Translations under genes and position numbers: made by a program
Shown here: positions 34,115 through 50,782 of the stretch, one piece after another
Position numbering within the stretch: the stretch's first letter is position 1
How the letters are laid out: each line of letters opens with the position of its first letter
Notes under the pieces: model-generated
Databases searched by the model: none
Told to the model about the DNA's origin: nothing
The model's input: the letters and a program-made list of their open reading frames with translations, nothing else
Virus record (IMG/VR): IMGVR_UViG_3300024308_000016
Location: 1-64,000 of that record
Strand: one strand, 5' to 3'
Length of the DNA: 64,000 nucleotides

Positions 34115-36073
34115 ATGTCTGAAAAGTTCAACTTCAACGCCCGCGCTGGCCAAGCTCAAGCCGAGGAAGTGGAAGACGTGCAACCGCGTCAACCCTCCGC
34201 AGCTTCGGGTGGCCGTGCCGAAGAAGTGCGTCGCGTCTCCAGCCCCTTCAAGACCCTGGCTCAAGGCTCTCGCCTGGTGGGTCAGCGCATCGCCGAAAAC
34301 GCCGGCTCCGACAAGTTCAATGCCCTGCTCAAGAACGTGCAGGAAGTGTTCAAGGAAGCCGATGCGGCCAAGGACGAATTCGTGATCCTGCCCATGCCCA
34401 AGGAAGTGACCCGCATGCACTTCTCGGCCATCGTGCTGGCGCGTCGTCCCGAAGTGCCCGTGGTCGAAGGCTGGTCGGTCAACCACCTGGTCGTGGCCCA
34501 GGTCCTGATGGTGGAAGCCACCGGCGACAACCCGCGCCCCTACAACGACGACTCGGTGCGCAACCGCAACTTCCAGATCACGCCCACGTCCGAAGACGTG
34601 TACAACGAGATCTTCCAGAACGCCGCTCGCAAGGTTGTCACCGATGCCCTGCGCACCCAAGTGGCCGTCAACCTGATGGACTGCGTGATCGTGCGCCGCG
34701 ACTTCGATGTCACCAACATCAACGACGTGCGCCGCCTGATCTCGGCCGCCACCACCGGCATCACCACCCGCGCCATGCAGCGTCACCCGGACTTCACCGA
34801 CTGGAACCTGTCGGGCTGGACCGACGGCATCCGCGACATCCAGCTGCCCGTGAGCATCGAGTCGACCACGACCGAAGTGCAAACGACTGCCAACGGCGAT
34901 GTCGTGCATGCGGACATGGTCATCACCGTGGGCGTGGAAAGCCGTCAGCGTGATCGCACTCCGCGTTTCAACGACGACATCAGCTCCGAGCCCGTGTGCG
35001 AAACCTCGGTGAACATCGAGCTGGTTCCCGTGAACCCGGACTTCCTGGACGATGCCGACATCAACCGCGGCCGTCGCCGTCGCCGTGACCAGGACTTCGT
35101 TCCCCAAGCGGCCTGGATGCCTCGCGCCAACATCGTGAATATCGAACAAATGCAGGCCCGCACCCTGGCCGGCATCCTGTTCTCCATCGCTTCGGTGTCC
35201 GAGCTCAACCGTGACCGCCAGTGGGCGTCGCTGTTCCGTCCCCGTCGTGGTGCCGGCCGCAAGGACGTGAACTTCTACGACATCGGCGCGCTGAACATCC
35301 ACGCAAACGTGGCCGACGAAAAGGGCGACTTCGGTCAGCCCATCGACACCACGATCCCCGAGTTCGGGGACGAAGAGTTCAGCATCTTCCTGGACCGCAC
35401 GCTGACGCAGCAGATGGCCATCGGCATCGACTGCCCGGACACCGGCCTGCAGGCGTTCTACACGGCATCGTTCGCGGCCATCGCCACCGGCGACAACAAG
35501 GTGCGCCAGCGCGCGACCATGGACGTGTTCGACGCAGCCATGGATCTGACCAACGGCGCCGTCGAGATGTTCTTCGATCCCACCAAGGATCAGATCATCG
35601 AAGGCCCCGGCGAGCGCTTCCACATGGGCTACTGGACCGACGCCAACGGCCAACGCCGTGACATCCGTCAGCTGGCATCGTTCCTGCCCGTGGCCAACAT
35701 GGTCGCATCCAACGGCTCCAACATGCGTCTGCTCGACGACTGGCTGGACACCTGGTTCGGCAGCCAGGACGAGAACTACCGCCTGGCCGAGCGCCTGAAG
35801 CTGCTCAACGCCATCTGCGACGATTCGCTCGTTGTCACTGGCATGGGCATCCGTCCTACCGTGACCGGCCACTTCGCCGACGCACTGGCCAAGGGCATCC
35901 GCGAAACCAACGTGCCTCTGGTGCCTCGTAACGGCGACCACAACACGGTGCTCCAACAGCGCCGCGTGGTGGCCGGCTACGGCACAGGCGCGCTGCTGCG
36001 CACCACCGGCGTGAGCCGCTCGCTGGAGCGCCGCGGTGGTGACGGCCGTCGCTACCGCCGCAGCTACAACTGA
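34115..36073 (+). CDS. chmA: Chimallin, phage nuclear shell protein
   Basis: 652 aa; directly upstream of nvRNAP beta' and downstream of DNA polymerase and gp52/53-like genes; strongly biased codons; DIGALNI and GYWTDANGQRRDIR segments; own promoter and terminator. Confidence 0.85.
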   Translation: MSEKFNFNARAGQAQAEEVEDVQPRQPSAASGGRAEEVRRVSSPFKTLAQGSRLVGQRIAENAGSDKFNALLKNVQEVFKEADAAKDEFVILPMPKEVTRMHFSAIVLARRPEVPVVEGWSVNHLVVAQVLMVEATGDNPRPYNDDSVRNRNFQITPTSEDVYNEIFQNAARKVVTDALRTQVAVNLMDCVIVRRDFDVTNINDVRRLISAATTGITTRAMQRHPDFTDWNLSGWTDGIRDIQLPVSIESTTTEVQTTANGDVVHADMVITVGVESRQRDRTPRFNDDISSEPVCETSVNIELVPVNPDFLDDADINRGRRRRRDQDFVPQAAWMPRANIVNIEQMQARTLAGILFSIASVSELNRDRQWASLFRPRRGAGRKDVNFYDIGALNIHANVADEKGDFGQPIDTTIPEFGDEEFSIFLDRTLTQQMAIGIDCPDTGLQAFYTASFAAIATGDNKVRQRATMDVFDAAMDLTNGAVEMFFDPTKDQIIEGPGERFHMGYWTDANGQRRDIRQLASFLPVANMVASNGSNMRLLDDWLDTWFGSQDENYRLAERLKLLNAICDDSLVVTGMGIRPTVTGHFADALAKGIRETNVPLVPRNGDHNTVLQQRRVVAGYGTGALLRTTGVSRSLERRGGDGRRYRRSYN

Positions 36074-36398: not shown

Positions 36399-36530
36399 CG
36401 CGGAACTTTCGGGAGTCTAGGAAAGACGCAGAGGAGCCGCTGGGCTCCTTTTCCTAGACTCTCTTTTTTTGTCTGCAATAAGATATGCAAACAAAACACA
36501 CCAGCTCTATAAACTGATCCCGCGATACCG

Positions 36531-36616: not shown

Positions 36617-39600
36617 TTGCCAATTGTTCTGGAAGTAGAAGACCACGATCGGATGTTTGCGCAAACTATCGAGCGCGTGGAGCCTATCTTTCTCAACGAC
36701 CTTGCCAACAGCACGGAAGAAGACAAAGAACGCATCCGCGCGCTGACGATGAACCAGCTCAATTCCGACACCATCTCGATCATTCCCAGATGCGGCTGCG
36801 GCCACACCAAAGGACGATTCGCCCTGGGCAAGCAATGCCCCGTGTGCCAAGATGTGGTCAAGAGCAACATCGACGAGTCAGTCACCAGCTTGCTGTGGTT
36901 CCGTAAACCGGAATTCGTGCACAAGCTCGTGAACCCGGCTGTGTGGTCGATGCTCAGCTCCTACTTCTCCAAAAGCAATTTCAACGCGATACAATACCTC
37001 ACCGACAACTTGTATACGGCGGGCACTCGTACACCTCCGGAGATCGAAAAGCTCTCCGAGTACGGCTTCGAGCGTGACTTGAACTTCTTCACCCGCAACT
37101 TCGACGACGTCTTAGGCGGGCTGATGAGCGCGTTCAAGCAAAAGGCCAACAAGCCTTATCGAGAGCTCATCGATTTCCTGGACGACAACAGGAGCCGTAT
37201 CTTCAGTGACCAACAACCCGTGCTCAACCGCGCGATGTTCGTTGCTGACAAGACCAACTTGGGCATCTACATGGAGAACTCCGTCAAAGATGCCCTTGAC
37301 GCGTACTACCACGTCGTCTCCATCGACAAAGACTTCCATGACAGAAGCGAGAAGGTGATCGTCAATCGCACTGCACGCATGCAGGCGCGTATGGCGGCGT
37401 TCTTCGACAGCTACACTGGCACCAACATGCAGCCCAAACCCGGGCATGCACGGCGCCACGTCTATGGATCTCGTGTCATCTTCTCTGCGCGAGGCGTGAT
37501 CAGCTCCACCACTGACCACCATCGCCATGATGAGATCGGAGTACCCTGGTGTATTGCGGTGCCGATGTTCCAGCACCACCTCGTCGGCATGCTCATGCGT
37601 CACGGCTTCACCTACAACGGTGCGCTGGGCTATGTGTATAGGCATGTGCACATCTACGATGAGCTGCTGCATCGCTTCTTGGACCAAATCTTCAGGGAGT
37701 ACCCGGGTGGCCGAGGACCATCGATGCTCCTCCATCGAAACGATTAGTAAACTATGAAATAGCATTCCTAATTAAGTGGACCAACTTAGTGAGGAAGCTA
37801 TGCCAATTCCAGCATTTACAAAAGAGTACAAACATCTCGGGAAGATTTACCGAGCTGTTCCCGGTTATCGACGACTGATAGTCTCTGAAGACGGAGAGTT
37901 TTATCGTCTTGGTGAAGACGGGAATCCTGCAAAGAGATGCCCGCAGTTCAAGATGCACAACACCCGCACTGAGCGAAGATCAGACACTACGTACTATTGG
38001 ACAGTACGAGAGATCGCGGATAATGGTGGCGTCAAAACCACCGGTGCTCACATCTTGGTGTGCAGAGCGTGGAATGGAATGCCCCCGGATGACGGGATCA
38101 AGTACGACGTTAACCACAAAAATAGCATCAAGACGGATAACAGGGCTGAAAACCTTGAATGGTCGACACGCTCGCAGAACATTGCTCACTGTTTCGATAG
38201 TGGGGAGAACTGCGCTGCCGTCCGGATCATCCAGCGAAACATAGAGACGGGGGAAGAGAAAATCTTCCGAAGTATCAAGAACTTCGCTGAGACCATGGGA
38301 CTATTTCGCGTGAATGTTCGCAGTTTCATCGCTGCGCATTCTAAGGAGCCTCATAACGGCTTCATCTACTCCATTGAGGAGCCGCGAAACTTCCGCATAA
38401 AGCCTGTACGTTATCAGACGAAAGAAGTGGCCTACTTCGATTATACGTCGCGAAAGCTCACAATCTGCTCCAGTATAGAGCATGCTAGTCTAGAGACAGG
38501 CATAAAGAGTGCGACCATCAAGCACGCGTGTAACCGCTTTGCTAACGATGGTGTCGCTGAGCCGACGCGTCAGTTCTTCTTCCAGTTTTTCAAACCTGGG
38601 ATGGAGTGGCCAGAATTCACTGCTGAGGAATTGGAGAAGTTCGAAAAGCGGTTCTTGAATTTTTCAAGAGCTGCAAGCGGACCTCGAAAACATAGTTCAG
38701 AATCATTTCCCTCTACAGAAATGTAGTTGTATCCCGGAACACCGGGAGTAAGTTCTTGAATTGCGGGAACATCTCGTAAGGTCCCCACTACCAAGCCAGT
38801 GTAGTAATGCGCTGGTGGCCTGGGTAACTACCAGGGTACGGTAACAAGGTGGGGAATAGAGACAATCCGCAGCGAAGCATCCGGAAACGGATGAACGTTC
38901 GACGGTCATCGAAAGGGGAAGGAAGTCGGGTAAGACTCCTGAGACCGAGTAGAGTAGGGCCCAAGTGGGTGCAGTAGCAAACTGCCGTAAGCCGAAGCGG
39001 GAACAGTCTGACCACTGAAAGGTGAAGACTAAGATATGACCTGTGCCACGCAGCTGAGTGATCGGCTGGTTTCCGAGAGGCGTGGAGGGTGTCGATGCAC
39101 ACCTGGACTTGCTAACGACAAGTTTGGACAAACAGCCCACTTTAATGCAGGGGTCGATGCAGCGAGTCTTCGGGAAACTGAAGACGGACCCTAGAGATAA
39201 GACTATCTCCATGTCGATCTTGATCGTCGTAGCTCCCAACGCTAAATTGGCCTATACGTCAGAAATGGCGTAGTGAATCTTACTGAATTGCTGGAACCCC
39301 CTAAGAGCCCCACTACCACTGCGAGCGGTAACGCAAAGCGACGGTTTGACAAGTGTGAGGATTGGACAACCAGCAGCGAAGCCTCCTTACGGGTGGAGGA
39401 ACGTTCAACGACTATGGCTGAGATGCCAGTACACTCAAGTGAGTGGAAGTAGTAAGCACCTTACCGGATAGAGCCGAAGGTGAAGATATAGTCTGACCTT
39501 TAGGGAAAGCCTAAAGACGCGCGTAATGGCGCTAGATAGTACTAACGACACTATCTGAACGCCCGTCGATTTCGATGGTCGATGGCCATCATTAAACTCT

Positions 39601-40076
39601 TTTAATTGTCAGGGAAACCCTTAGAGCCTCCGATTGGAAGATTGGGCAATCTGCAGCGAAGCCTCCCAATAGGGAGGAACGTTCAACGATCATCGAAAGG
39701 GTAGGGCGTACAGCCTGAGTAACCGAGTAGAGTAGAACCCGCTAGCCATTAAGGCGGGAAGAAACGGAGAGCTCCCAGAAATGGGAGAAGAAATGATCTC
39801 AGCCGGTGTGAAAGCATCGGACGCTCTGTACGGTGTACAGGGTCCCCTGGGTGGTGCCAGGGTAAAGACGCCCGAGTGCGGCGTGTACAATGCAAACTGG
39901 ACGCACTCAACTTGATGTTGGCGCCTGATGCCAAGATGGCCCGGTTCTGGGAAGTCTTTGCACCGGACTACAACATCTTCTTGATGGAAAACCCGATGGA
40001 GGCATCGGGCAACCTTGCGCTGACCAAACCCGTGGTGATGAGCGGGGGTGAATGGTTGGCTGACGAGGACGACTGA
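36617..40076 (+). CDS. Non-virion RNA polymerase beta'-like subunit (phiKZ gp55-like), spliced from four exons: 36617-37741 (or 37744), 39136-39243, 39568-39579, 39900-40076
   Basis: TTG start after gaaagga; Zn finger CGCG...CPVC; KPGHARRHVYGSR...SARGVI; joined exons read LLHRN|PTLMQGSMQ...VVAPNA|DFDG|DALN, the beta' NRxPTL and NADFDGD motifs. Confidence 0.9.
37742..39135 (+). mobile_element. Group I intron 1 carrying HNH endonuclease (5' splice site after 37741 or 37744)
   Basis: P gaattgcgggaa, Q aatccgcagc, R gttcgacggtca, S aagatatgacct (P7 pairs); terminal G at 39135. Confidence 0.9.
37800..38726 (+). CDS. Intron-encoded HNH homing endonuclease (NUMOD4/I-HmuI-like)
   Basis: AHILVCRAW...VNHKNSIKTDNRAENLEWSTRSQNIAH; C-terminal NUMOD1-like segments (IFRSIKNFA, CSSIEHASLETGI); gaggaag RBS. 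Confidence 0.92.
   Translation: MPIPAFTKEYKHLGKIYRAVPGYRRLIVSEDGEFYRLGEDGNPAKRCPQFKMHNTRTERRSDTTYYWTVREIADNGGVKTTGAHILVCRAWNGMPPDDGIKYDVNHKNSIKTDNRAENLEWSTRSQNIAHCFDSGENCAAVRIIQRNIETGEEKIFRSIKNFAETMGLFRVNVRSFIAAHSKEPHNGFIYSIEEPRNFRIKPVRYQTKEVAYFDYTSRKLTICSSIEHASLETGIKSATIKHACNRFANDGVAEPTRQFFFQFFKPGMEWPEFTAEELEKFEKRFLNFSRAASGPRKHSSESFPSTEM
39244..39567 (+). mobile_element. Group I intron 2 (no ORF; 3' end uncertain by a few nt)
   Basis: GCU|AAAUUGGC P1 with U-G pair; P gaattgctggaa, Q aaccagcagc, R gttcaacgacta, S aagatatagtct. Confidence 0.9.
39580..39899 (+). mobile_element. Group I intron 3 (no ORF)
   Basis: P1 GAUGGU|CGAUG-GCCAUC with U-G at the splice site; Q aatctgcagc, R gttcaacgatca, S aagaaatgatct; terminal G 39899 precedes GAC GCA CTC. 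Confidence 0.9.
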
Positions 40077-40086
40077 CAGTGATCTC

Positions 40087-40132
40087 TATCTCCCGGCTCC
40101 CATCTAGGGAGGCCGGGAGATAGGGTCTGTTT
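40087..40132 (+). terminator. Terminator after RNAP gene
   Basis: ctatctcccggc ... gccgggagatag inverted repeat. Confidence 0.7.
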
Positions 40133-45469: not shown

Positions 45470-48400
45470 ATGAAACTAGCACAAATGAGTCTCGCCATGC
45501 AAATGCTATCGTCGGAGCACATAGGCTATGACACACTGCGCAACGGTGTGTTGACCCAGCAGCAAAGACAGCCGGATACCCCGGAGGGTCGCCACATACG
45601 CGCCAAAATCCAGGTAATCCTTCCGTTATTCGGGAGTTTGCAGCATGCGATCTGGGAGCTGGAGCAGATGGTCTTTACCCATAGCACTCCCTTCGAAGAG
45701 ATCGAGCGGCATTACAGAGTGATCCGGGAAATCGGCTGTTCCCTGTGGGATCAATTCAAGGCCGCCACGCGCATCGAGCCTAGAAAGCAAAAATGAAACT
45801 CAGTAACCGGATATACCTAACCACTCAAGCCGCCAGGATGGAGACAGCTCTAGAGACTCTGGCAGCTTACCGGATGCATCTATTTGCCGAGATGACCTCA
45901 AAAGGCTCAGATCCCCGAGTTGTCTCGATACTTAGCACCATCCGAAACGTCCGTAACTTCCTGACTGAGACTTGTGCATTAGCGCATATCTCCAGTGTCT
46001 CAGACCTGTACTTCTCATTTGTCTTCGAATGGATCGATGACTTTGATACAGAGCTACTGAGATTTAGGGAGTTAGAGCGTCAGTTTTGGGCCCTTATGAG
46101 AGAGCTAGACAAATGAACCTCAAAAGACACGTCGAGATCAATGGGGCCGTGGCGGCCGGCTACCAGCACGCGGCAAAGATGCACAGGGAGCTGCTGCAAT
46201 ACCGTGACAGCATCGACCTGCACTGGCCAGTGCTCAGGACAGAGCCTGAGCAAGTGCTCAAGCTCTTTCGCCGTGCCTCCGACGATGTCGCGGGAGTGGC
46301 TATAGCTGTCGACTATCTGGACACGGCTAGGATGGAACCAGGTGCGCAGCATGGCAAGATGCAGGATCTGTGGACCGGCATCACGTGCGCCGTCATGGGA
46401 GCCGCGGTCGCGTTGAACACCCTGAAGCGGGAGATTATGCGTACGGGAGGCAACCGTGAAGCTCGCTGATCTGTCGTTTGCCGTAGAGCAGTACCAGCTC
46501 CTGACGGACTCGTACTACCGGATCACCGCGATGATGAATACCCCGACAACCCAGGTGGCTTTTGTACTGACCTCCCGTGAAATAGACCAGGTCTCGGAGC
46601 TATACCACGATATCCATGGCAGAAAAGAAAAGATGTACCGGCACTTGGGGTTCTTGGAGACATCGATCTTGAGGTCCAATCAAGAGCTGGTCACTTCTAA
46701 CACTTCGGTGATCGTCGCCCTGAATGCCGTGCTATTGGCTTCGATCGATCGGCTCACAGCCAAGATCGCGCAGCTACTCCTTAATAGAAAGTCTTCCCAA
46801 TGAAATACCAACCACTGGTCCAGACCGCCGTCCCGGCCTGCGAGTACATAAAGCAAGTCGAAGTGCTGGCCCACTTCCTCGATGATGTCGGACGTCAGAT
46901 AGAAAACCAACCACTTGTCGAGGGCGCCACTATGCAGATGCACAACTCAGCAGTCGCGCATATCAATAAAGTCATGAAAGATGCCAGCGGCTTCACCCTG
47001 GGGTTGGTGATCGACATCTTCATAGGAAGCACTGGTGAAGAAGATGCCGTGCAGCATTGCAAGACAGCTCCTCTTCTTATTACAGCCTTGGAAGATGCCC
47101 TCAGAAGCTGGTTGCAACTGTACGGTGTCTCCGTTTCCTTCCACTACAAATGAAGAAGGACACACTTCTGCAGCTGATCGAAGGCATGTACCAGATTCGT
47201 CTGGAGTACGACCGCCTGATCGATCACTGGGCAGACTATCGACAGCGCCTACTCACCAAGTTCAATAACTCAGGCGGGCAGCCCGCGTCCCAAGAGCTCA
47301 GGGACATGACCGAGCGACTGTACTATGCTGATGACGATTACTGCGAAGAGGAGGAGGCTCTTCTGCTGTATATCTGGGGCTCCAAAGACGACATAGATGC
47401 ATTAGAATCAATTAAGTCTGGATTATCTGCAGCTCTTTCTAATATAGCGGATGCACTATCTGCTATTCGCGCTTATTTGAAAAGATATAATCTATGAAAC
47501 TCAACCTGATAATAAGGGCAGCTAATTGGCTGCATATAAAGAGTTACAGAGTTGAATATCTGCACTCTATTTATGTCGATATAAACGAGCGGATCAATGC
47601 GATATTCGAGGCTGCTGATTTCAATGACTTTGTCATGGATCCGATCACAATCGAGCAGCTCAAACAGCTGCATCAATCTGTGCACATGACCGCCCGCATC
47701 CAGCATGGTGTGACGGCGCATCTGATGGCGTCGGATCTGACACCGGACGCTTTCAAGCGATACAATCTGGATTTCTGGCAAGCCGACGCTGCCGCCCTCT
47801 GTGCCTTCCAGGCGTTGGAGCTACGAATCAAACAAGGAACTGTCATGAAAGGAAGAACATGATCAAGACCACCCTACCAGTTCGCATGGAGGGTTATCAC
47901 CACTACGACACGTCCATCCGGCTGTCGGCAGTCATTGACTCATTCATCGAGTCGGTGGAGTCCTTCATCAACGGCCTGCGCACACTGATGGCCGACAGCA
48001 CTGATGAAGAGCTCATCAAACACCACAACCGCCTGCAGGAGCTGCGCCTGGACGCATGTGTGGACTCCGCCGATGCGGAAGAAGGCATGAACGAAGGCGC
48101 CACCTACATGCTGGCTCTGGGACCTCACCAGCGCTACTTCGAAATATCCAAAGGAATCATCGACAAGCTGCTGACCAAGTATGGTCAGCTGACCGAGGAA
48201 GTGTACGCGATTTCCATCTTCATCAACGGGAGGTTCGATGCGCTTGACTGAATGGAAGCAAGCGGCCAGCGACTTGTCGCTGCTGGAGTCGATCGATGGC
48301 CAGATCCGCGAGTGCATGGGTAGGAACTCCGTCAAGAGTTTCTCCACCAAGATCGCTCCCGAGAAAGCCATGCAGGACATGCAGTTGTGCCTGGAGCTCT

Positions 48401-48567
48401 CGGATACGTACTTCAAGTGGCTGGCGGCTTACCAGGAACACTATGTCAACGCATTCTCCAACAGCATCAAGTTCGATGCATTGGTGGCGTTGTTCTTCGA
48501 GGCATTTAGGCTCAGTCAGACGTTCTTCAAGCTCAGCAACGCTCGTGTGGCGCTGAGGCTGGGATAA
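45470..48567 (+). other. Array of nine translationally coupled small helical CDSs (45470-45796, 45793-46116, 46113-46469, 46456-46803, 46800-47153, 47150-47497, 47494-47862, 47859-48251, 48238-48567)
   Basis: All 107-130 aa with overlapping stop/start codons; bounded by hairpins at about 45405-45440 and 48578-48628. Confidence 0.8.
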
Positions 48568-48669
48568 AGCGTCCTCTATCCACCAGCCCCCGATGGGCTG
48601 GTGGATGAGTGCTCTTTTCTTTTTTGTCTGCGATGTTCGGATCATCATCTGGTAAAACACGGAGGATCT

Positions 48670-49017
48670 ATGGACATCAACATCGTAAGTGGTCTGCTGG
48701 TGAGCCACTTCAAAGCTCTGTACGAGCAGTACCCTGGAGAGCAATTCAACTGCATCGTCACCGCCAAGCAGTCGTGCAGGAAACGCAACTACCCGTACCT
48801 TGTCACGGGCTATGCGGTATCGTCGAATGTGGCCAAGCGTATCTTGTACCTGACCAGCGAGATCAGTAAGGTGGCGCCCGGTCCTGTGGAAGCAGACACT
48901 CGCATCTACGTGAGGACATCCAAGAACGTACCGATCTCCTACTTCTGGGTGAGAGACAACAACACGCTGGAGCCTATCGAGCTGCCCCTGACTCCTGAAG
49001 ACCCAAGACCTACGTAG
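48670..49017 (+). CDS. Hypothetical protein
   Basis: ggagg RBS. Confidence 0.7.
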   Translation: MDINIVSGLLVSHFKALYEQYPGEQFNCIVTAKQSCRKRNYPYLVTGYAVSSNVAKRILYLTSEISKVAPGPVEADTRIYVRTSKNVPISYFWVRDNNTLEPIELPLTPEDPRPT

Positions 49018-49077
49018 AAAATAGCTGGCCTCTGTATACAGTGATCCGACTTGGATTGCTTATGGAGGTTTCGGGAA

Positions 49078-49350
49078 ATGGGAGATAACATCGGTAACTT
49101 GGTGCTGGGCTGGTACGGCATCGTCATGTGCGTCGTGTTGATCATGGCGTGCATCGGCTTCATCGCCTCGTTCAGCGACAACCTGGCGCTGTGGACCAGC
49201 ATCCCGCTGGGCGCGGCAGCTGGCGTGTTCGTGACATGGGCGGCGCACTGGTTCATGATGGTGGTGGTGGGATTCGTCGCCGCCATGGGGCCCAAGTTGT
49301 TCGACTTCATTCAGCGGGACTTCCAAAAGACGATCGGCTGGTTCAGCTGA
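49078..49350 (+). CDS. Small membrane protein
   Basis: ggagg RBS; hydrophobic. Confidence 0.65.
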   Translation: MGDNIGNLVLGWYGIVMCVVLIMACIGFIASFSDNLALWTSIPLGAAAGVFVTWAAHWFMMVVVGFVAAMGPKLFDFIQRDFQKTIGWFS

Positions 49351-49401
49351 CGCATTCACACCTTCGCTTTCCTTCGGGAAAGCGAAGGTGGATATATGCC
49401 G

Positions 49402-49439
49402 TGTGTAGAAAATCTGAATCACTTATACTCTACTTGAGG
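49402..49439 (+). promoter_or_regulatory. Phage bipartite promoter motif, copy 9
   Basis: tgtgta at 49402, cacttatactctacttgagg at 49420. Confidence 0.8.
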
Positions 49440-49481
49440 CAATGGCTTCAATTCTTTTATTTTAAATAGGAAAGCAGTCTA

Positions 49482-50087
49482 ATGTATCATAATCACACTC
49501 GGGTATATCGCGGACATAATCCGTTTATTCGATTAGCTCCGATTGCCAAACTCCATTTCCCTGTCGCGGTATTAAACGCGATGGATAAAGTCGTCGCCAA
49601 GAACCTTAAATACCTGGGCACACATCTGTATGCGGCAACGTTTGAGGCGCACAGCGTCAATGGCCGTGACTATGGCCATGGCATCGCCCTGTACCAAGAA
49701 GAGGGCGGCTACCTAGAGACTCGCGAAACTGGCGGTGCTCTTCGGATCTACGCATTGAACCGGACTCTGGAAGGTGTGCATCCGATCGATCGAAAGCCTG
49801 CAGATTTCCCCGAGCTGTGGGGTGATCTGAATTGCCCCAACGATCGCGACTACTTGCTGGGCTCACAGATGGTGGTCGACATCGTCGGCAGTCTCGTTCC
49901 CCATCAGCACCCGGTCTACTCGATCTCGTGCGGCGGCATCGACAGACAGCAGCCATTGGCGTTTCTGGATGTGGAGATGCGTGATGCACGCATAGGCCCC
50001 TACGCGATAGAGTGGGAGTTTGTCCGAGCAGACAAAGCCATCAACAACTCCATGAGCTGGATCCGCGGTGTTCGAGACCCCCGATAA
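49482..50087 (+). CDS. Hypothetical protein
   Basis: First ORF after promoter copy 9. Confidence 0.7.
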   Translation: MYHNHTRVYRGHNPFIRLAPIAKLHFPVAVLNAMDKVVAKNLKYLGTHLYAATFEAHSVNGRDYGHGIALYQEEGGYLETRETGGALRIYALNRTLEGVHPIDRKPADFPELWGDLNCPNDRDYLLGSQMVVDIVGSLVPHQHPVYSISCGGIDRQQPLAFLDVEMRDARIGPYAIEWEFVRADKAINNSMSWIRGVRDPR

Positions 50088-50102
50088 GAAAGGACAAGAG
50101 TT

Positions 50103-50204
50103 ATGGAAAAGATGATCGAGAAAGCCGAAGCGTGGTGTGATCGCTACGGCAAGGGTGCCGCTGTTGCAGGCGCAGTGTTGTTCTTTGTGGTGGCACACTT
50201 CTGA
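50103..50204 (+). CDS. Small membrane peptide (33 aa)
   Basis: gaaagga RBS; MEKMIEKAEAWCDRYGKGAAVAGAVLFFVVAHF; TGATG coupling to next gene. Confidence 0.55.
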   Translation: MEKMIEKAEAWCDRYGKGAAVAGAVLFFVVAHF

Positions 50205-50755
50205 TGGCATTTGAACTTGAGAAGTCCTACACAGGCACGATCACTGACCCTCAGCGAGTGTTCACTCAAGCGCTGGGTACCCATCCTGTCCCCTATGAGA
50301 CGGACGTGCTGCGTCTGCTCGATCAGTGGGGCGGCCGATACGCCGACGATCTGAAGATCATCGGAGCATTTCGCTACAACAATTTCGTCTCCTCGATGAC
50401 GTTCCTTCGCTCGTCTGAGCCGGTCAGCATGATGATCGCTCGGCGAGACTTGCATGTGACCGATCAAGGCAGACCAGTATCCACTGCTCCGGCAACTGGT
50501 CAGCATATGGCACTGAAACCAGTTGACGGCATCAGCGAGATCATGACAGGTGCTCAGCGAAAGCGCTTGGAAGTGATGTGCCGCGACCTGTTCAAGATTC
50601 TAGCCTCCAAAGGCTACAACTTGGTAGCCAGGAGTGTGGCGTATTCCCGACTGGGCGGAACTTGGGCAGAAGGTGGCTTCGACATCACCTTCCATCGCTC
50701 AGATGCCCAGTATGTCTACTGCATGAACGTGCTTCGCCAAGCGGTGAAGAAGTAA
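50204..50755 (+). CDS. Hypothetical protein
   Basis: Operonic ORF. Confidence 0.7.
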   Translation: MAFELEKSYTGTITDPQRVFTQALGTHPVPYETDVLRLLDQWGGRYADDLKIIGAFRYNNFVSSMTFLRSSEPVSMMIARRDLHVTDQGRPVSTAPATGQHMALKPVDGISEIMTGAQRKRLEVMCRDLFKILASKGYNLVARSVAYSRLGGTWAEGGFDITFHRSDAQYVYCMNVLRQAVKK

Positions 50756-50782
50756 TCCCCTCTCTTTTCTGAAAGTCTCATC

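What the first reader, a model, noticed from the sequence alone, without database searches (positions are those of the whole stretch)
39136..40076. RNA polymerase catalytic motif NADFDGD assembled from three exons, including a 12-nt micro-exon between back-to-back group I introns
Seen: exon 2 ends CCC AAC GCT (PNA, 39243). A complete group I core follows (P/Q/R/S, P7 GACUA/UAGUC). Then come 12 nt, GAT TTC GAT GGT (DFDG, 39568-39579), a second complete core (P7 GAUCA/UGAUC, P1 GAUGGU/GCCAUC with U-G at the cut, terminal G 39899), and GAC GCA CTC (DAL). Joined, these give PNA-DFDG-D, which contains the universal Mg-binding beta' motif, found nowhere contiguously in this gene. The micro-exon is almost fully used for splicing: its 5' half GAUUU can pair with the intron 2 guide AAAUU, and its 3' half GAUGGU forms intron 3 P1. 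With intron 1 in the RNPTL motif, three splicing events gate production of the polymerase. Known: single introns occur in phiKZ-type nvRNAP genes. Inference: a triple insertion with a catalytic micro-exon is unusual. It could impose ordered splicing, permit exon skipping to an in-frame inactive enzyme (PNA-DALN), act as a timer for middle/late transcription, or shield the site from rival homing endonucleases.
Basis: partly seen in the sequence, partly recalled or inferred. Interest (0 to 1): 0.93.

Follow-up and report, generated by a model that had tools for sequence, protein, structure and literature searches.

The report
Three introns split phage polymerase gene
The gene for a jumbo phage's own RNA polymerase is cut by three self-splicing introns, two of them bracketing a 12-base exon that encodes the heart of the catalytic site; this layout is real and recurs in related phages, so it looks like a pile-up of mobile introns, not a special control device.

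Summary
Confirmed. The gene at 36617-40076 (+) is the phiKZ gp55-type non-virion RNA polymerase beta'-N subunit of an uncultivated nucleus-forming jumbo phage; the chimallin gene lies just upstream.

It is cut by three group I introns: 37742-39135 (carries an HNH endonuclease ORF), 39244-39567 and 39580-39899. Joining 36617-37741, 39136-39243, the 12-nt micro-exon 39568-39579 (DFDG) and 39900-40076 gives a 473-aa protein colinear with an uninterrupted 474-aa relative, restoring RNPTL and NADFDGD.

Rfam scores introns 2 and 3 above threshold. Covariation in relatives supports the intron 1 and intron 3 families.

The layout is not unique. 26 of the 30 closest homologous ORFs stop at these sites. 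Relatives carry micro-exons of 3, 8-9, 9, 12 and 21 nt and up to four introns. phiKZ has one intron in the same motif and KTN4 has two.

- Intron 1 has C, not U, before the cut, opposite an A in the guide. Relatives have U.G there.
- Intron 2 ends in C39567, not the canonical G. This is unexplained.

I found no evidence for a timer or for ordered splicing. The best reading is a stack of homing introns at a conserved hot spot. It is a new variant of a known kind, of moderate interest.

The parts
36617..37741 (+). Exon 1 of the nvRNAP beta'-N gene. TTG start after AAAGGAG; 375 aa; ends ...LLHRN.
   Evidence: tblastn 30-34% identity to nvRNAP beta' of RP12, FLC9, Noxifer and PhiPA3 gp054. PDB 7OGP chain A (PHIKZ055/056.1), E 2.2e-49. 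PHROG 2987, E 4.7e-101. Relatives start MPI(I/V)LE at the same place.
37742..39135 (+). Intron 1: group I, 1394 nt, with the endonuclease ORF in the P1 loop. Core elements: AAUUGCGGGAA 38759-69, CAAUCCGCAGC 38863-73, GUUCGACGGUCA 38897-908, AAGAUAUGACC 39031-41 (P7 GGUCA/UGACC). The last base is G39135.
   Evidence: Rfam gives only 18.7 bits. It is 72-74% identical to the cores of L021, L019 and L010, and L010's intron passes the Rfam threshold. In alignment A4, 48 of 99 predicted pairs show compensatory changes. Coordinates.
37800..38726 (+). Intron-encoded HNH homing endonuclease ORF (308 aa). Its 3' end overlaps the internal guide and the next hairpin.
   Evidence: Pfam HNH_3, E 1.6e-10, above the cutoff; I-HmuI NUMOD-like is weak. 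PHROG 59 HNH endonuclease, E 1.3e-22. The N-terminus MP(I/V)PAFT(K/R)E is shared with the ORFs in L010 and L021.
38705..38709 (+). Internal guide of intron 1 (AUUUC). It pairs with exon GAAAC 37737-41, and A38705 lies opposite C37741 at the cut.
   Evidence: Comparison. L019 and L021: exon GAAAU / guide GUUUC. L010: exon GGAAU / guide GUUCC. Window: exon GAAAC / guide AUUUC, in the same position before a conserved GAAA/GUGA-looped hairpin.
39136..39243 (+). Exon 2 (36 aa, PTLMQGSM...IVVAPNA).
   Evidence: Translation; colinear with P0003. Exons 2-4 against L006: pN 0.049 vs pS 0.69.
39244..39567 (+). Intron 2: group I, 324 nt, no ORF. P1 GCU 39241-43 / GGC 39249-51, or alternatively ACGCU 39239-43 / GGCGU 39267-71. 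P10 AAAUU 39244-48 / GAUUU 39568-72. P2 UACGUC 39255-60 / GGCGUA 39267-72. P7 GACUA/UAGUC. The last base is C39567, which is non-canonical.
   Evidence: Rfam 65.8 bits. 90% identical to the intron at the same site in L008, with compensatory changes in P9. Coordinates. Junction table.
39568..39579 (+). Micro-exon GATTTCGATGGT (DFDG).
   Evidence: The only DFDG site in the window. The same 12-nt exon between two introns occurs in L008, L013 and L017.
39580..39899 (+). Intron 3: group I, 320 nt, no ORF. P1 GAUGGU 39574-79 / GCCAUC 39585-90 with U.G at the cut. P7 GAUCA/UGAUC. The last base is G39899.
   Evidence: Rfam 52.3 bits. Eight-member family alignment A2: 96.9% of cells paired and 26 of 46 pairs changed on both sides; the slid controls give 38-47% paired and 2-7 pairs. 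P1 covaries, GAUGGU/GCCAUC vs GACGGU/GCCGUC.
39900..40076 (+). Exon 4 (58 aa, DALNLMLAPD...LADEDD, plus the TGA stop).
   Evidence: 93% identical to the C-terminus of P0003. pN 0.058 vs pS 0.60.
34115..36073 (+). Context: the upstream chimallin (phage nuclear shell) gene, which marks the genome as a chimallivirus.
   Evidence: PHROG 4795 nuclear shell protein, E 1.4e-44. The syntenic gene in relatives carries PF25677. In phiKZ, gp54 lies next to gp55.

Best explanation
The beta'-N subunit gene of the phage's non-virion RNA polymerase (the phiKZ gp55 orthologue) carries three independent group I self-splicing introns with T4/phiKZ-like core motifs.

How the mRNA is made (inferred):
- Each intron folds into its own ribozyme and is removed by the usual two guanosine-initiated transesterifications.
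- The mRNA then joins 36617-37741, 39136-39243, 39568-79 and 39900-40076.
- It encodes a 473-aa protein with intact RNPTL and NADFDGD motifs.

Role of the micro-exon (pairings shown in sequence):
- Its 5' half (GAUUU) is the 3' exon of intron 2 and pairs with that intron's guide (P10).
- Its 3' half (GAUGGU) is the 5' exon of intron 3 and forms that intron's P1.
- The two halves do not overlap, so the two splicing events can run in either order.

Origin (inferred):
- Related mobile introns, moved by HNH and LAGLIDADG homing endonucleases, have piled up on the two most conserved stretches of the gene.
- Each insertion point also occurs on its own in related phages.
- The introns move between phages. 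Intron 2 is 90% identical between two phages whose host protein is only 71% identical.

Shown: the intron models, exon colinearity, covariation, recurrence in relatives, and purifying selection on the downstream exons.
Inferred: self-splicing itself, homing as the cause of the stacking, and the absence of any regulatory role.
For: - Rfam hits above threshold for introns 2 and 3.
- Relatives' introns also pass: 17 hits in 14 loci.
- Covariation in the intron 3 family: 96.9% paired, 26 of 46 double changes, all nine helices including P7.
- Covariation in the intron 1 family: 48 of 99 predicted pairs.
- The spliced product is colinear with the uninterrupted P0003 and with Noxifer, PhiPA3, FLC9 and RP12.
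- Exons 2-4 give dN/dS of about 0.03-0.05.
- Each site is found alone. DFDG|D alone in L007, L145 and L155. RN|PTL without an intron in the NADFDGD motif in L010. In L019 and L021 the contig ends before that motif. NA|D was never seen alone: in every locus complete enough to tell it comes with DFDG|D.
- The 12-nt micro-exon also occurs in L008, L013 and L017.
- 23 of 24 complete introns have U at -1, and 23 of 24 end in G.
- Intron 2 is 90% identical to L008's, while the host proteins are 71% identical.
- An HNH ORF lies in intron 1. HNH and LAGLIDADG ORFs lie in relatives' introns.
- phiKZ and KTN4 carry group I introns in the same gene at N|ADFDGD and RN|PTL.
Against: - The last base of intron 2 is C39567. 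All 23 other complete introns in the set end in G, and sliding the junctions does not recover a G without destroying NADFDGD. If the ribozyme used the next G (39568), the mRNA would be one base short and out of frame.
- Intron 1 has C at -1.
- No RNA data exist for this phage.
- For phiKZ, a long-read transcriptome study reported no evidence of splicing of the predicted introns (PMC10914365). Against that, the solved nvRNAP structure lists the joined PHIKZ055/PHIKZ056.1 chain.
Confidence: 0.85

Rival explanations
1. The gene copy in this assembly is broken at intron 2. With C in place of the terminal G, exon ligation fails or shifts to G39568. That would give a frameshifted, truncated beta' (...APNAISMV...). 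The contig would then represent a defective variant, or C39567 is an assembly or base-call error or a minority allele.
For: - C39567 is the only non-G terminal base among 24 complete introns.
- The homologous intron in L008 ends ...GGUAUG|.
- The 11-nt tail is rearranged relative to L008: a 2-nt insertion plus substitutions.
- The tail contains AACGCC, a copy of the intron-less exon sequence seen in L007.
- A TCGATGG tandem duplication lies just downstream.
- From established knowledge (my own recall, not checked here): the terminal G is required for the second step, and mutating it activates nearby cryptic sites.
Against: - Exon 4 downstream is 93% identical to P0003 and under strong purifying selection.
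- The P10 pairing AAAUU/GAUUU is flush with P1 and specifies exactly the 39567|39568 junction.
- An abundant 272-kb environmental contig is unlikely to be a dead phage.
- The whole tail differs from L008, not just one base, which argues against a simple base-call error.
Confidence: 0.35
2. The triple interruption is a regulatory device. Splicing of three introns, or inclusion versus skipping of the micro-exon, gates or times production of the active middle/late polymerase.
For: - Skipping the 12 nt stays in frame, by arithmetic.
- Exon skipping by tandem group I introns was reported for phage Twort orf142. That title is listed; the paper itself was not readable here.
- The gene product is needed for middle and late transcription (phiKZ literature).
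Against: - Close relatives have zero, one, two, three or four introns at varying positions in the same gene. The number and position are therefore not conserved, as a regulatory design would require.
- The two pairings on the micro-exon do not overlap.
- The guide of intron 2 (AAAUU) does not match exon 4 (GACGC).
- The intron-less allele P0003 shows that the introns are dispensable.
Confidence: 0.07
3. The region 39244-39899 is one composite intron or a twintron, and the DFDG coding is a coincidence. The real product would then be PNA-DALN.
Against: - NADFDGD is present in every full-length homologue examined.
- The micro-exon is the only DFDG site in the window.
- It keeps its reading frame and changes only at synonymous third positions in L008, L013 and L017.
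- Each flanking intron occurs as a free-standing intron elsewhere: L007 has only the downstream one.
- Each has its own full core.
Confidence: 0.02

Closest known systems
Group I introns in phiKZ gene 55 (HNH gp56, second exon gp56.1) and in its KTN4 orthologue
   Same: - Same gene (nvRNAP beta'-N) and same synteny after chimallin.
- A group I intron with an HNH ORF lies inside the NADFDGD-coding stretch: phiKZ AAT|...|GCTGATTTTGACGGC, Rfam 75.6 bits.
- KTN4 adds a second intron at HRN|PTL, the same site as window intron 1 (87.5 and 74.7 bits).
- The 3' part of the phiKZ intron resembles window intron 2: the GUAAUGG hairpin, the UAACGAC loop and the CUGAAC tail.
   Different: - phiKZ has one intron and KTN4 two. 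Neither has a micro-exon.
- The insertion point in the motif is N|A, not NA|D or DFDG|D.
- The window has a third intron and the 12-nt exon.
- GenBank annotates these as separate CDS, not as introns.
PhiPA3 gp210 intron in the virion RNAP beta subunit (Birkholz et al. 2024, PMC11620839)
   Same: A group I intron with an HNH endonuclease sits right at conserved catalytic aspartates of a chimallivirus RNA polymerase gene. The endonuclease acts against co-infecting relatives.
   Different: It is a different gene (vRNAP beta, not nvRNAP beta'). It is a single intron with no micro-exon. Its function has been tested; here nothing has.
Staphylococcus phage Twort orf142: three group I introns in one gene, with exon skipping (Landthaler and Shub 1999; cited, recalled from memory, paper not readable here)
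   Same: Several group I introns in a single phage gene. It is also a precedent for skipped products.
   Different: A different gene. I could not check the exon sizes. It is not described as splitting a catalytic motif into a 4-codon exon.
Micro-exons flanked by group I introns in mitochondrial cox1 (for example the placozoan 1-nt exon, PMC5436844)
   Same: A very short coding exon is isolated by two independent group I introns inserted next to each other, and it is needed to restore a conserved residue.
   Different: That case is an organellar genome, not a virus, and it involves group IB introns. Here the micro-exon lies in a polymerase catalytic loop, and its length varies among related phages (3 to 21 nt).
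T4 td / nrdB / nrdD introns and the SPO1 I-HmuI intron (the classic phage group I introns)
   Same: - The same core sequence motifs: AAUUGCGGG, CCGCAGC, GUUCAACGACUA, AAGAUAUAGUC.
- The endonuclease ORF lies in a peripheral loop.
- Insertion at conserved sites of essential genes.
- The ORF carries HNH_3 plus a weak I-HmuI NUMOD-like match.
   Different: Those phages carry one intron per gene. Subgroup IA2 membership was not formally tested here.

Membership tests
Group I self-splicing intron (Rfam RF00028) | Conserved catalytic core (P3-P8 with the P7 guanosine-binding helix) recognised by the covariance model | tested here: met
   Intron 2 scores 65.8 bits and intron 3 scores 52.3 bits against a gathering score of 50. 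Intron 1 scores 18.7 bits alone, but it aligns with threshold-passing relatives and shows compensatory changes, including in P7.
Group I self-splicing intron (Rfam RF00028) | Base pairs of the core maintained by compensatory change in relatives | tested here: met
   Intron 3 family: 96.9% paired and 26 of 46 pairs changed on both sides; slid controls give 38-47% paired. Intron 1 family: 48 of 99 pairs. Intron 2 has only one close relative; its P9 hairpins are compensated.
Group I self-splicing intron (Rfam RF00028) | U at the last exon position, forming a U.G wobble with the internal guide in P1 | tested here: inconclusive
   Met for intron 2 (U39243.G) and intron 3 (U39579.G39585). Not met for intron 1, where C37741 lies opposite A38705. 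Three relatives have U.G at the same position. A C.A pair could mimic the wobble; that is my recollection of Doudna et al. 1989 and was not checked here.
Group I self-splicing intron (Rfam RF00028) | Guanosine as the last intron nucleotide | tested here: inconclusive
   Met for intron 1 (G39135) and intron 3 (G39899). Not met for intron 2 (C39567). 23 of 24 complete introns in the set end in G.
Group I self-splicing intron (Rfam RF00028) | Self-splicing with guanosine in vitro or in vivo | not testable with these tools
   No RNA data are available. Indirect support: removal restores the frame, and the downstream exons are under purifying selection.
phiKZ-type nvRNAP beta'-N subunit (gp55) | Sequence homology to gp55, and synteny next to chimallin | tested here: met
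   7OGP chain A, E 2.2e-49. PHROG 2987. tblastn to 297 jumbo-phage records. Chimallin lies upstream.
phiKZ-type nvRNAP beta'-N subunit (gp55) | Double-psi beta-barrel motifs RxPxL and NADFDGD, with spacing close to that of homologues | tested here: met
   After splicing the sequence reads RNPTL, then 31 aa, then NADFDGD. Noxifer has 32 aa between the motifs. The protein is colinear with P0003.
HNH homing endonuclease (I-HmuI-like) | An HNH catalytic domain within an intron-borne ORF | tested here: met
   Pfam HNH_3, 40.9 bits against a cutoff of 24.8. The NUMOD-like match scores 17.2 bits, below its cutoff. PHROG 59. Cleavage activity and target were not tested.
Twintron (an intron nested within an intron) | One intron interrupts the other, so that the outer one cannot fold until the inner one is removed | tested here: not met
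   The two cores lie side by side and are separated by a conserved coding exon. Each has its own P1 and 3' end.

The most novel reading that the evidence does not exclude
Both near-universal boundary rules of group I introns may be broken naturally and functionally in one gene.

- Intron 1 would cut after a C that lies opposite an A. This is a U.G to C.A double change relative to three relatives.
- Intron 2 would ligate its exons with a C, not a G, as its last nucleotide. The site would then be fixed by a flush 5-bp P10 alone.

If the C is real and splicing is accurate, 3' splice-site choice in this ribozyme does not need the terminal guanosine.
Probability: 0.2. Interest if true: 0.8.

Novelty: new variant of a known kind. 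Interest (0 to 1): 0.55.

Why it matters
1. Annotation. ORF callers truncate this essential polymerase subunit in 26 of the 30 closest database entries, and they cannot see exons of 3 to 21 nt. nvRNAP beta' is therefore systematically mis-annotated in metagenomic jumbo phages, and even in GenBank isolates such as KTN4.

2. Biology of mobile introns. The RNPTL-to-NADFDGD stretch has at least nine insertion points and up to four introns per gene. That density gives a natural system for competition between homing endonucleases of the kind shown experimentally for PhiPA3 gp210.

3. RNA folding. Tandem, closely related ribozymes that share a 12-nt (or 3-nt) exon must fold without swapping domains.

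4. Gene fission. The hot spot lies just upstream of the point where jumbo-phage beta' genes are split. This bears on the published idea that the splits arose through intron mobility (PMC7598289).

5. Ribozyme rules. The two odd boundary nucleotides are cheap to test and could be informative.

Tried and rejected
- Megablast of the whole gene against 50,697 phage records gave no match. The phage has no close cultured relative.
- I slid the intron 2 junctions by +/-1 or 2 nt to recover a terminal G. The products are NVDFDGD with G at -1, NANFDGD with A at -1, or frameshifts. All were rejected (reasoned).
- I considered alternative 5' sites for intron 1: after U37744 or U37745 (pairing ACGAU/GUUGU), which would give RNDPTL, and after U37735. 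These were rejected because relatives place the guide at 38705-09 and keep RxPxL.
- An alternative parse that uses the exon-like AACGCC in the tail of intron 2 is out of frame.
- Two loose DNA-pattern scans of IMG/VR returned about 140 loci, nearly all chance matches. Only L134/L161, L145 and L155 were relevant.
- My own regex scan for further intron cores was badly designed and found nothing. It was replaced by the Rfam E-value scan, which found no other intron in the window.
- RNAalifold mispredicted P1 in alignment A2, so P1 was tabulated by hand.
- Literature searches found no paper that combines a group I intron with NADFDGD, and none on non-G terminal nucleotides.
- The Twort paper (PMC22036) is not held.
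- No independent copy of the window's sequence exists in the collections. The IMG/VR and JGI hits are the same contig, so C39567 could not be cross-checked.


Full report
**What is there.**
The window is part of a 272-kb uncultivated viral contig (IMGVR_UViG_3300024308_000016).
- The ORF that starts at TTG 36617 is the N-terminal beta' subunit of a phiKZ-type non-virion RNA polymerase.
- It has 30-34% identity to the annotated subunits of Ralstonia phage RP12, Burkholderia phage FLC9, and Pseudomonas phages Noxifer and PhiPA3.
- It matches the solved phiKZ chain 'PHIKZ055 / PHIKZ056.1' at E 2.2e-49 and PHROG 2987.
- The gene upstream (34115-36073) is chimallin, the phage nuclear-shell protein. 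The same synteny is seen in phiKZ and in all fetched relatives.
- The ORF stops at 37745-47, right after ...LLHRN-D.

**The observation.** Every coordinate in the finding is right.
- Rfam's group I model hits 39211-39516 (65.8 bits) and 39547-39820 (52.3 bits). Both are above the gathering score.
- A third, weak hit (18.7 bits) covers 38651-39053.
- Joining 36617-37741, 39136-39243, 39568-39579 and 39900-40076 gives a 473-aa protein reading ...LLHRN|PTLMQGSMQRVFGKLKTDPRDKTISMSILIVVAPNA|DFDG|DALNLMLAPD....
- An uninterrupted 474-aa relative (P0003, 78% identical) reads ...LLHRNPTLQQGSMQRVFGYLKTDTRDKTISMSILIVVAPNADFDGDALNLMLAPD.... The three joins are therefore fixed by homology to the codon.
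- GATTTCGATGGT is the only DFDG-coding site in all six frames of the window.
- Exons 2-4 differ from the intron-less L006 mostly at synonymous sites (pN 0.049, pS 0.69). This frame has therefore been translated over evolutionary time.

**The introns are ribozymes.**
- Intron 3: I aligned eight introns at the same site (window, L007, L011, L012, L016, L017, L018, L134). I scored nine helices, including the P7 pseudoknot. 96.9% of cells are paired and 26 of 46 pairs change on both sides. With the partners slid by 1-3 columns the figures fall to 38-47% paired and 2-7 pairs.
- P7 of that family runs through GAUCA/UGAUC, GGUCA/UGACC, GAUUA/UAAUC and GACUA/UAGUC.
- P1 covaries with the exon: GAUGGU/GCCAUC against GACGGU/GCCGUC or GCUGUC.
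- Intron 1: its core aligns with introns that do pass the Rfam threshold. 48 of 99 predicted pairs carry compensatory changes.
- Intron 2: it has one close relative, in L008. That copy is 90% identical and has compensated P9 hairpins.
- Intron 1 carries an HNH endonuclease ORF (37800-38726). Introns 2 and 3 have no ORF.

**Splice-site anatomy.**
- Intron 3: P1 is GAUGGU (39574-79) with GCCAUC (39585-90). There is U.G at the cut, and the last base is G39899.
- Intron 2: the exon end GCU (39241-43) pairs with GGC (39249-51). The adjacent AAAUU (39244-48) pairs with the first five micro-exon bases, GAUUU. P1 and P10 are therefore flush and specify the 39243/39568 join.
- A second, mutually exclusive possibility is ACGCU/GGCGU (39267-71) with GAAAU/AUUUC. 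However, GGCGUA also closes a P2-like hairpin with UACGUC, and this is how the Rfam model aligns it.
- The two pairings on the micro-exon use separate halves. The sequence therefore imposes no order on the two splicing events.
- Intron 1: comparison located the guide just before a conserved hairpin at the end of the endonuclease ORF. L019 and L021 have exon GAAAU with guide GUUUC. L010 has GGAAU with GUUCC. The window has GAAAC with AUUUC. The ORF therefore sits in the P1 loop.

- In intron 1 the base before the cut is C37741, opposite A38705. The three relatives have U opposite G. Both partners have changed. From memory, a C.A pair can adopt the wobble geometry and was reported to substitute for U.G in vitro; I could not check that here.
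- Intron 2 ends in C39567. Of 24 complete introns tabulated across 11 loci, 23 end in G and 23 follow a U. The window supplies both exceptions.
- Sliding the intron 2 junctions does not help. Every alternative with a terminal G destroys NADFDGD or the frame.
- The whole 11-nt tail of intron 2 differs from L008 (GAACGCCCGUC against CGAAGGUAUG). It contains AACGCC, the intron-less exon sequence of L007. Its CCGUC is complementary to GAUGG in the micro-exon.
- Just downstream, a TCGATGG tandem duplication replaces the usual P1 loop of this intron family.
- I cannot tell whether C39567 is an assembly artefact, a real and tolerated exception, or a recent defect. No independent copy of the sequence exists in the collections.

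**The layout is part of a wider pattern.**
- Of the 30 closest homologous ORFs (E <= 1e-20), three are full length and one is cut by a contig end. The other 26 stop after reading into an intron:
  - 12 at HR(N)|
  - 2 after RNPTL
  - 6 after (P)NA
  - 4 after NAD/NCD
  - 2 after DFDG
- DNA of 15 relatives shows the following:
  - the same 12-nt micro-exon in L008, L013 and L017
  - a 9-nt exon (TTYGACGGT) in L011
  - a 3-nt exon (GAT) plus a 9-nt exon, so three introns inside NADFDGD, in L016 and L018
  - a fourth intron at HR|NPTL in L018
  - an 8-9-nt PTL exon in L010
  - about 20 nt (PTLQQGS) in L021
  - a 21-nt exon (PNADFDG) in the more distant L134
- Alleles that carry an intron use codons ending in U before it (GGT, GCT, AAT). 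Intron-less alleles have GGA or GGC, GCC and AAC.
- Cultured phages show the same theme. phiKZ gene 55 carries a group I intron (75.6 bits) with the HNH gp56 at PN|ADFDGD. KTN4 has that intron plus another at HRN|PTL. GenBank lists these as separate CDS.

**How it most likely works and arose.**
- The three introns self-splice independently and the mRNA encodes a normal subunit.
- The stacking is best explained by repeated homing into the two most conserved stretches of an essential gene. This is the classic preference of such elements (reviewed in PMC12908238).
- Introns pass between diverged phages. Intron 2 is 90% identical where the host protein is 71% identical.
- ORF-less introns are probably carried along by co-conversion, or by endonucleases supplied in trans. 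This is inferred.
- A regulatory role (timer, ordered splicing, dominant-negative skipped product) has no support. The number and position of introns vary freely among close relatives, and an intron-less allele exists.

**Comparison and novelty.**
- Already known: single introns in jumbo-phage RNAP genes (phiKZ gp56, gp72 and gp179 predicted; PhiPA3 gp210 tested); several introns in one phage gene (Twort, title cited); and micro-exons between group I introns in mitochondria.
- I found no paper that describes tandem introns with a micro-exon in a phage gene or in the NADFDGD motif.
- I therefore rate this as a new variant of a known kind. It is of moderate interest in itself. It is more interesting as the tip of a widespread, unannotated hot spot, and for its two odd boundary nucleotides.

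Noticed in passing
window 37741 and 38705: The intron 1 cut site has C opposite A, where three related introns have U opposite G. Both partners changed. It may be a natural C.A substitute for the conserved wobble pair.
   Followed up: partly
window 39557-39590: The tail of intron 2 (GAACGCCCGUC) ends in C, not G. It contains AACGCC, a copy of the intron-less exon sequence. Its CCGUC is complementary to GAUGG at 39574-78 and 39581-85. A tandem TCGATGG duplication (39572-78 / 39579-85) replaces the usual P1 loop of intron 3. The region looks like a local rearrangement around the micro-exon.
   Followed up: partly
L016:4770-6100 and L018:5617-7411: Three introns lie inside the NADFDGD-coding stretch, with a 3-nt micro-exon (GAT) and a 9-nt micro-exon (TTCGACGGT). 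L018 has a fourth intron at HR|NPTL. All boundaries are canonical.
   Followed up: partly
L010:1413-3306, L021:5635-7374 and L134 (minus strand): Further micro-exons occur elsewhere. An 8-9 nt exon CCAACGCT(T) (PTL) lies between two introns in L010. About 20 nt (PTLQQGS) lies between two in L021. A 21-nt exon CCAAATGCTGATTTTGACGGT (PNADFDG) lies between a 2-kb and a 345-nt intron in a phage only 35-44% identical.
   Followed up: partly
L165 (Pseudomonas phage KTN4, KU521356, 49538-53620) and L164 (phiKZ 47923-50761): The GenBank records list the pieces of the nvRNAP beta'-N gene and the intron ORFs as separate CDS. Rfam finds group I introns of 87.5 and 74.7 bits in KTN4 and 75.6 bits in phiKZ, at HRN|PTL and PN|ADFDGD.
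   Followed up: yes
window 39244-39567 against L008:3429-3750: Intron 2 is 90% identical between two phages whose host protein is 71% identical. Its 3' third (P9 region) is much more diverged but compensated. This suggests horizontal movement and mosaic introns.
   Followed up: partly
all loci, exon codons before introns: The codon before each intron ends in T in intron-bearing alleles (GGT, GCT, AAT). Intron-less alleles use GGA/GGC, GCC and AAC. Synonymous codon choice therefore tracks intron presence.
   Followed up: partly
window 34115-36073: A chimallin (phage nucleus shell) gene lies directly upstream, so the contig is a nucleus-forming chimallivirus. GC-rich inverted repeats followed by T runs lie at about 36410-36470 and 40085-40125. 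They look like terminators flanking the polymerase gene; this comes from reading the sequence, not from a scan.
   Followed up: no
L019:6235-6978 and L017:5794-6654: Introns at the same sites in relatives carry different endonuclease types (LAGLIDADG, a faint match, in L019; HNH in L017 and L021). The hot spot is therefore targeted by more than one endonuclease family.
   Followed up: no
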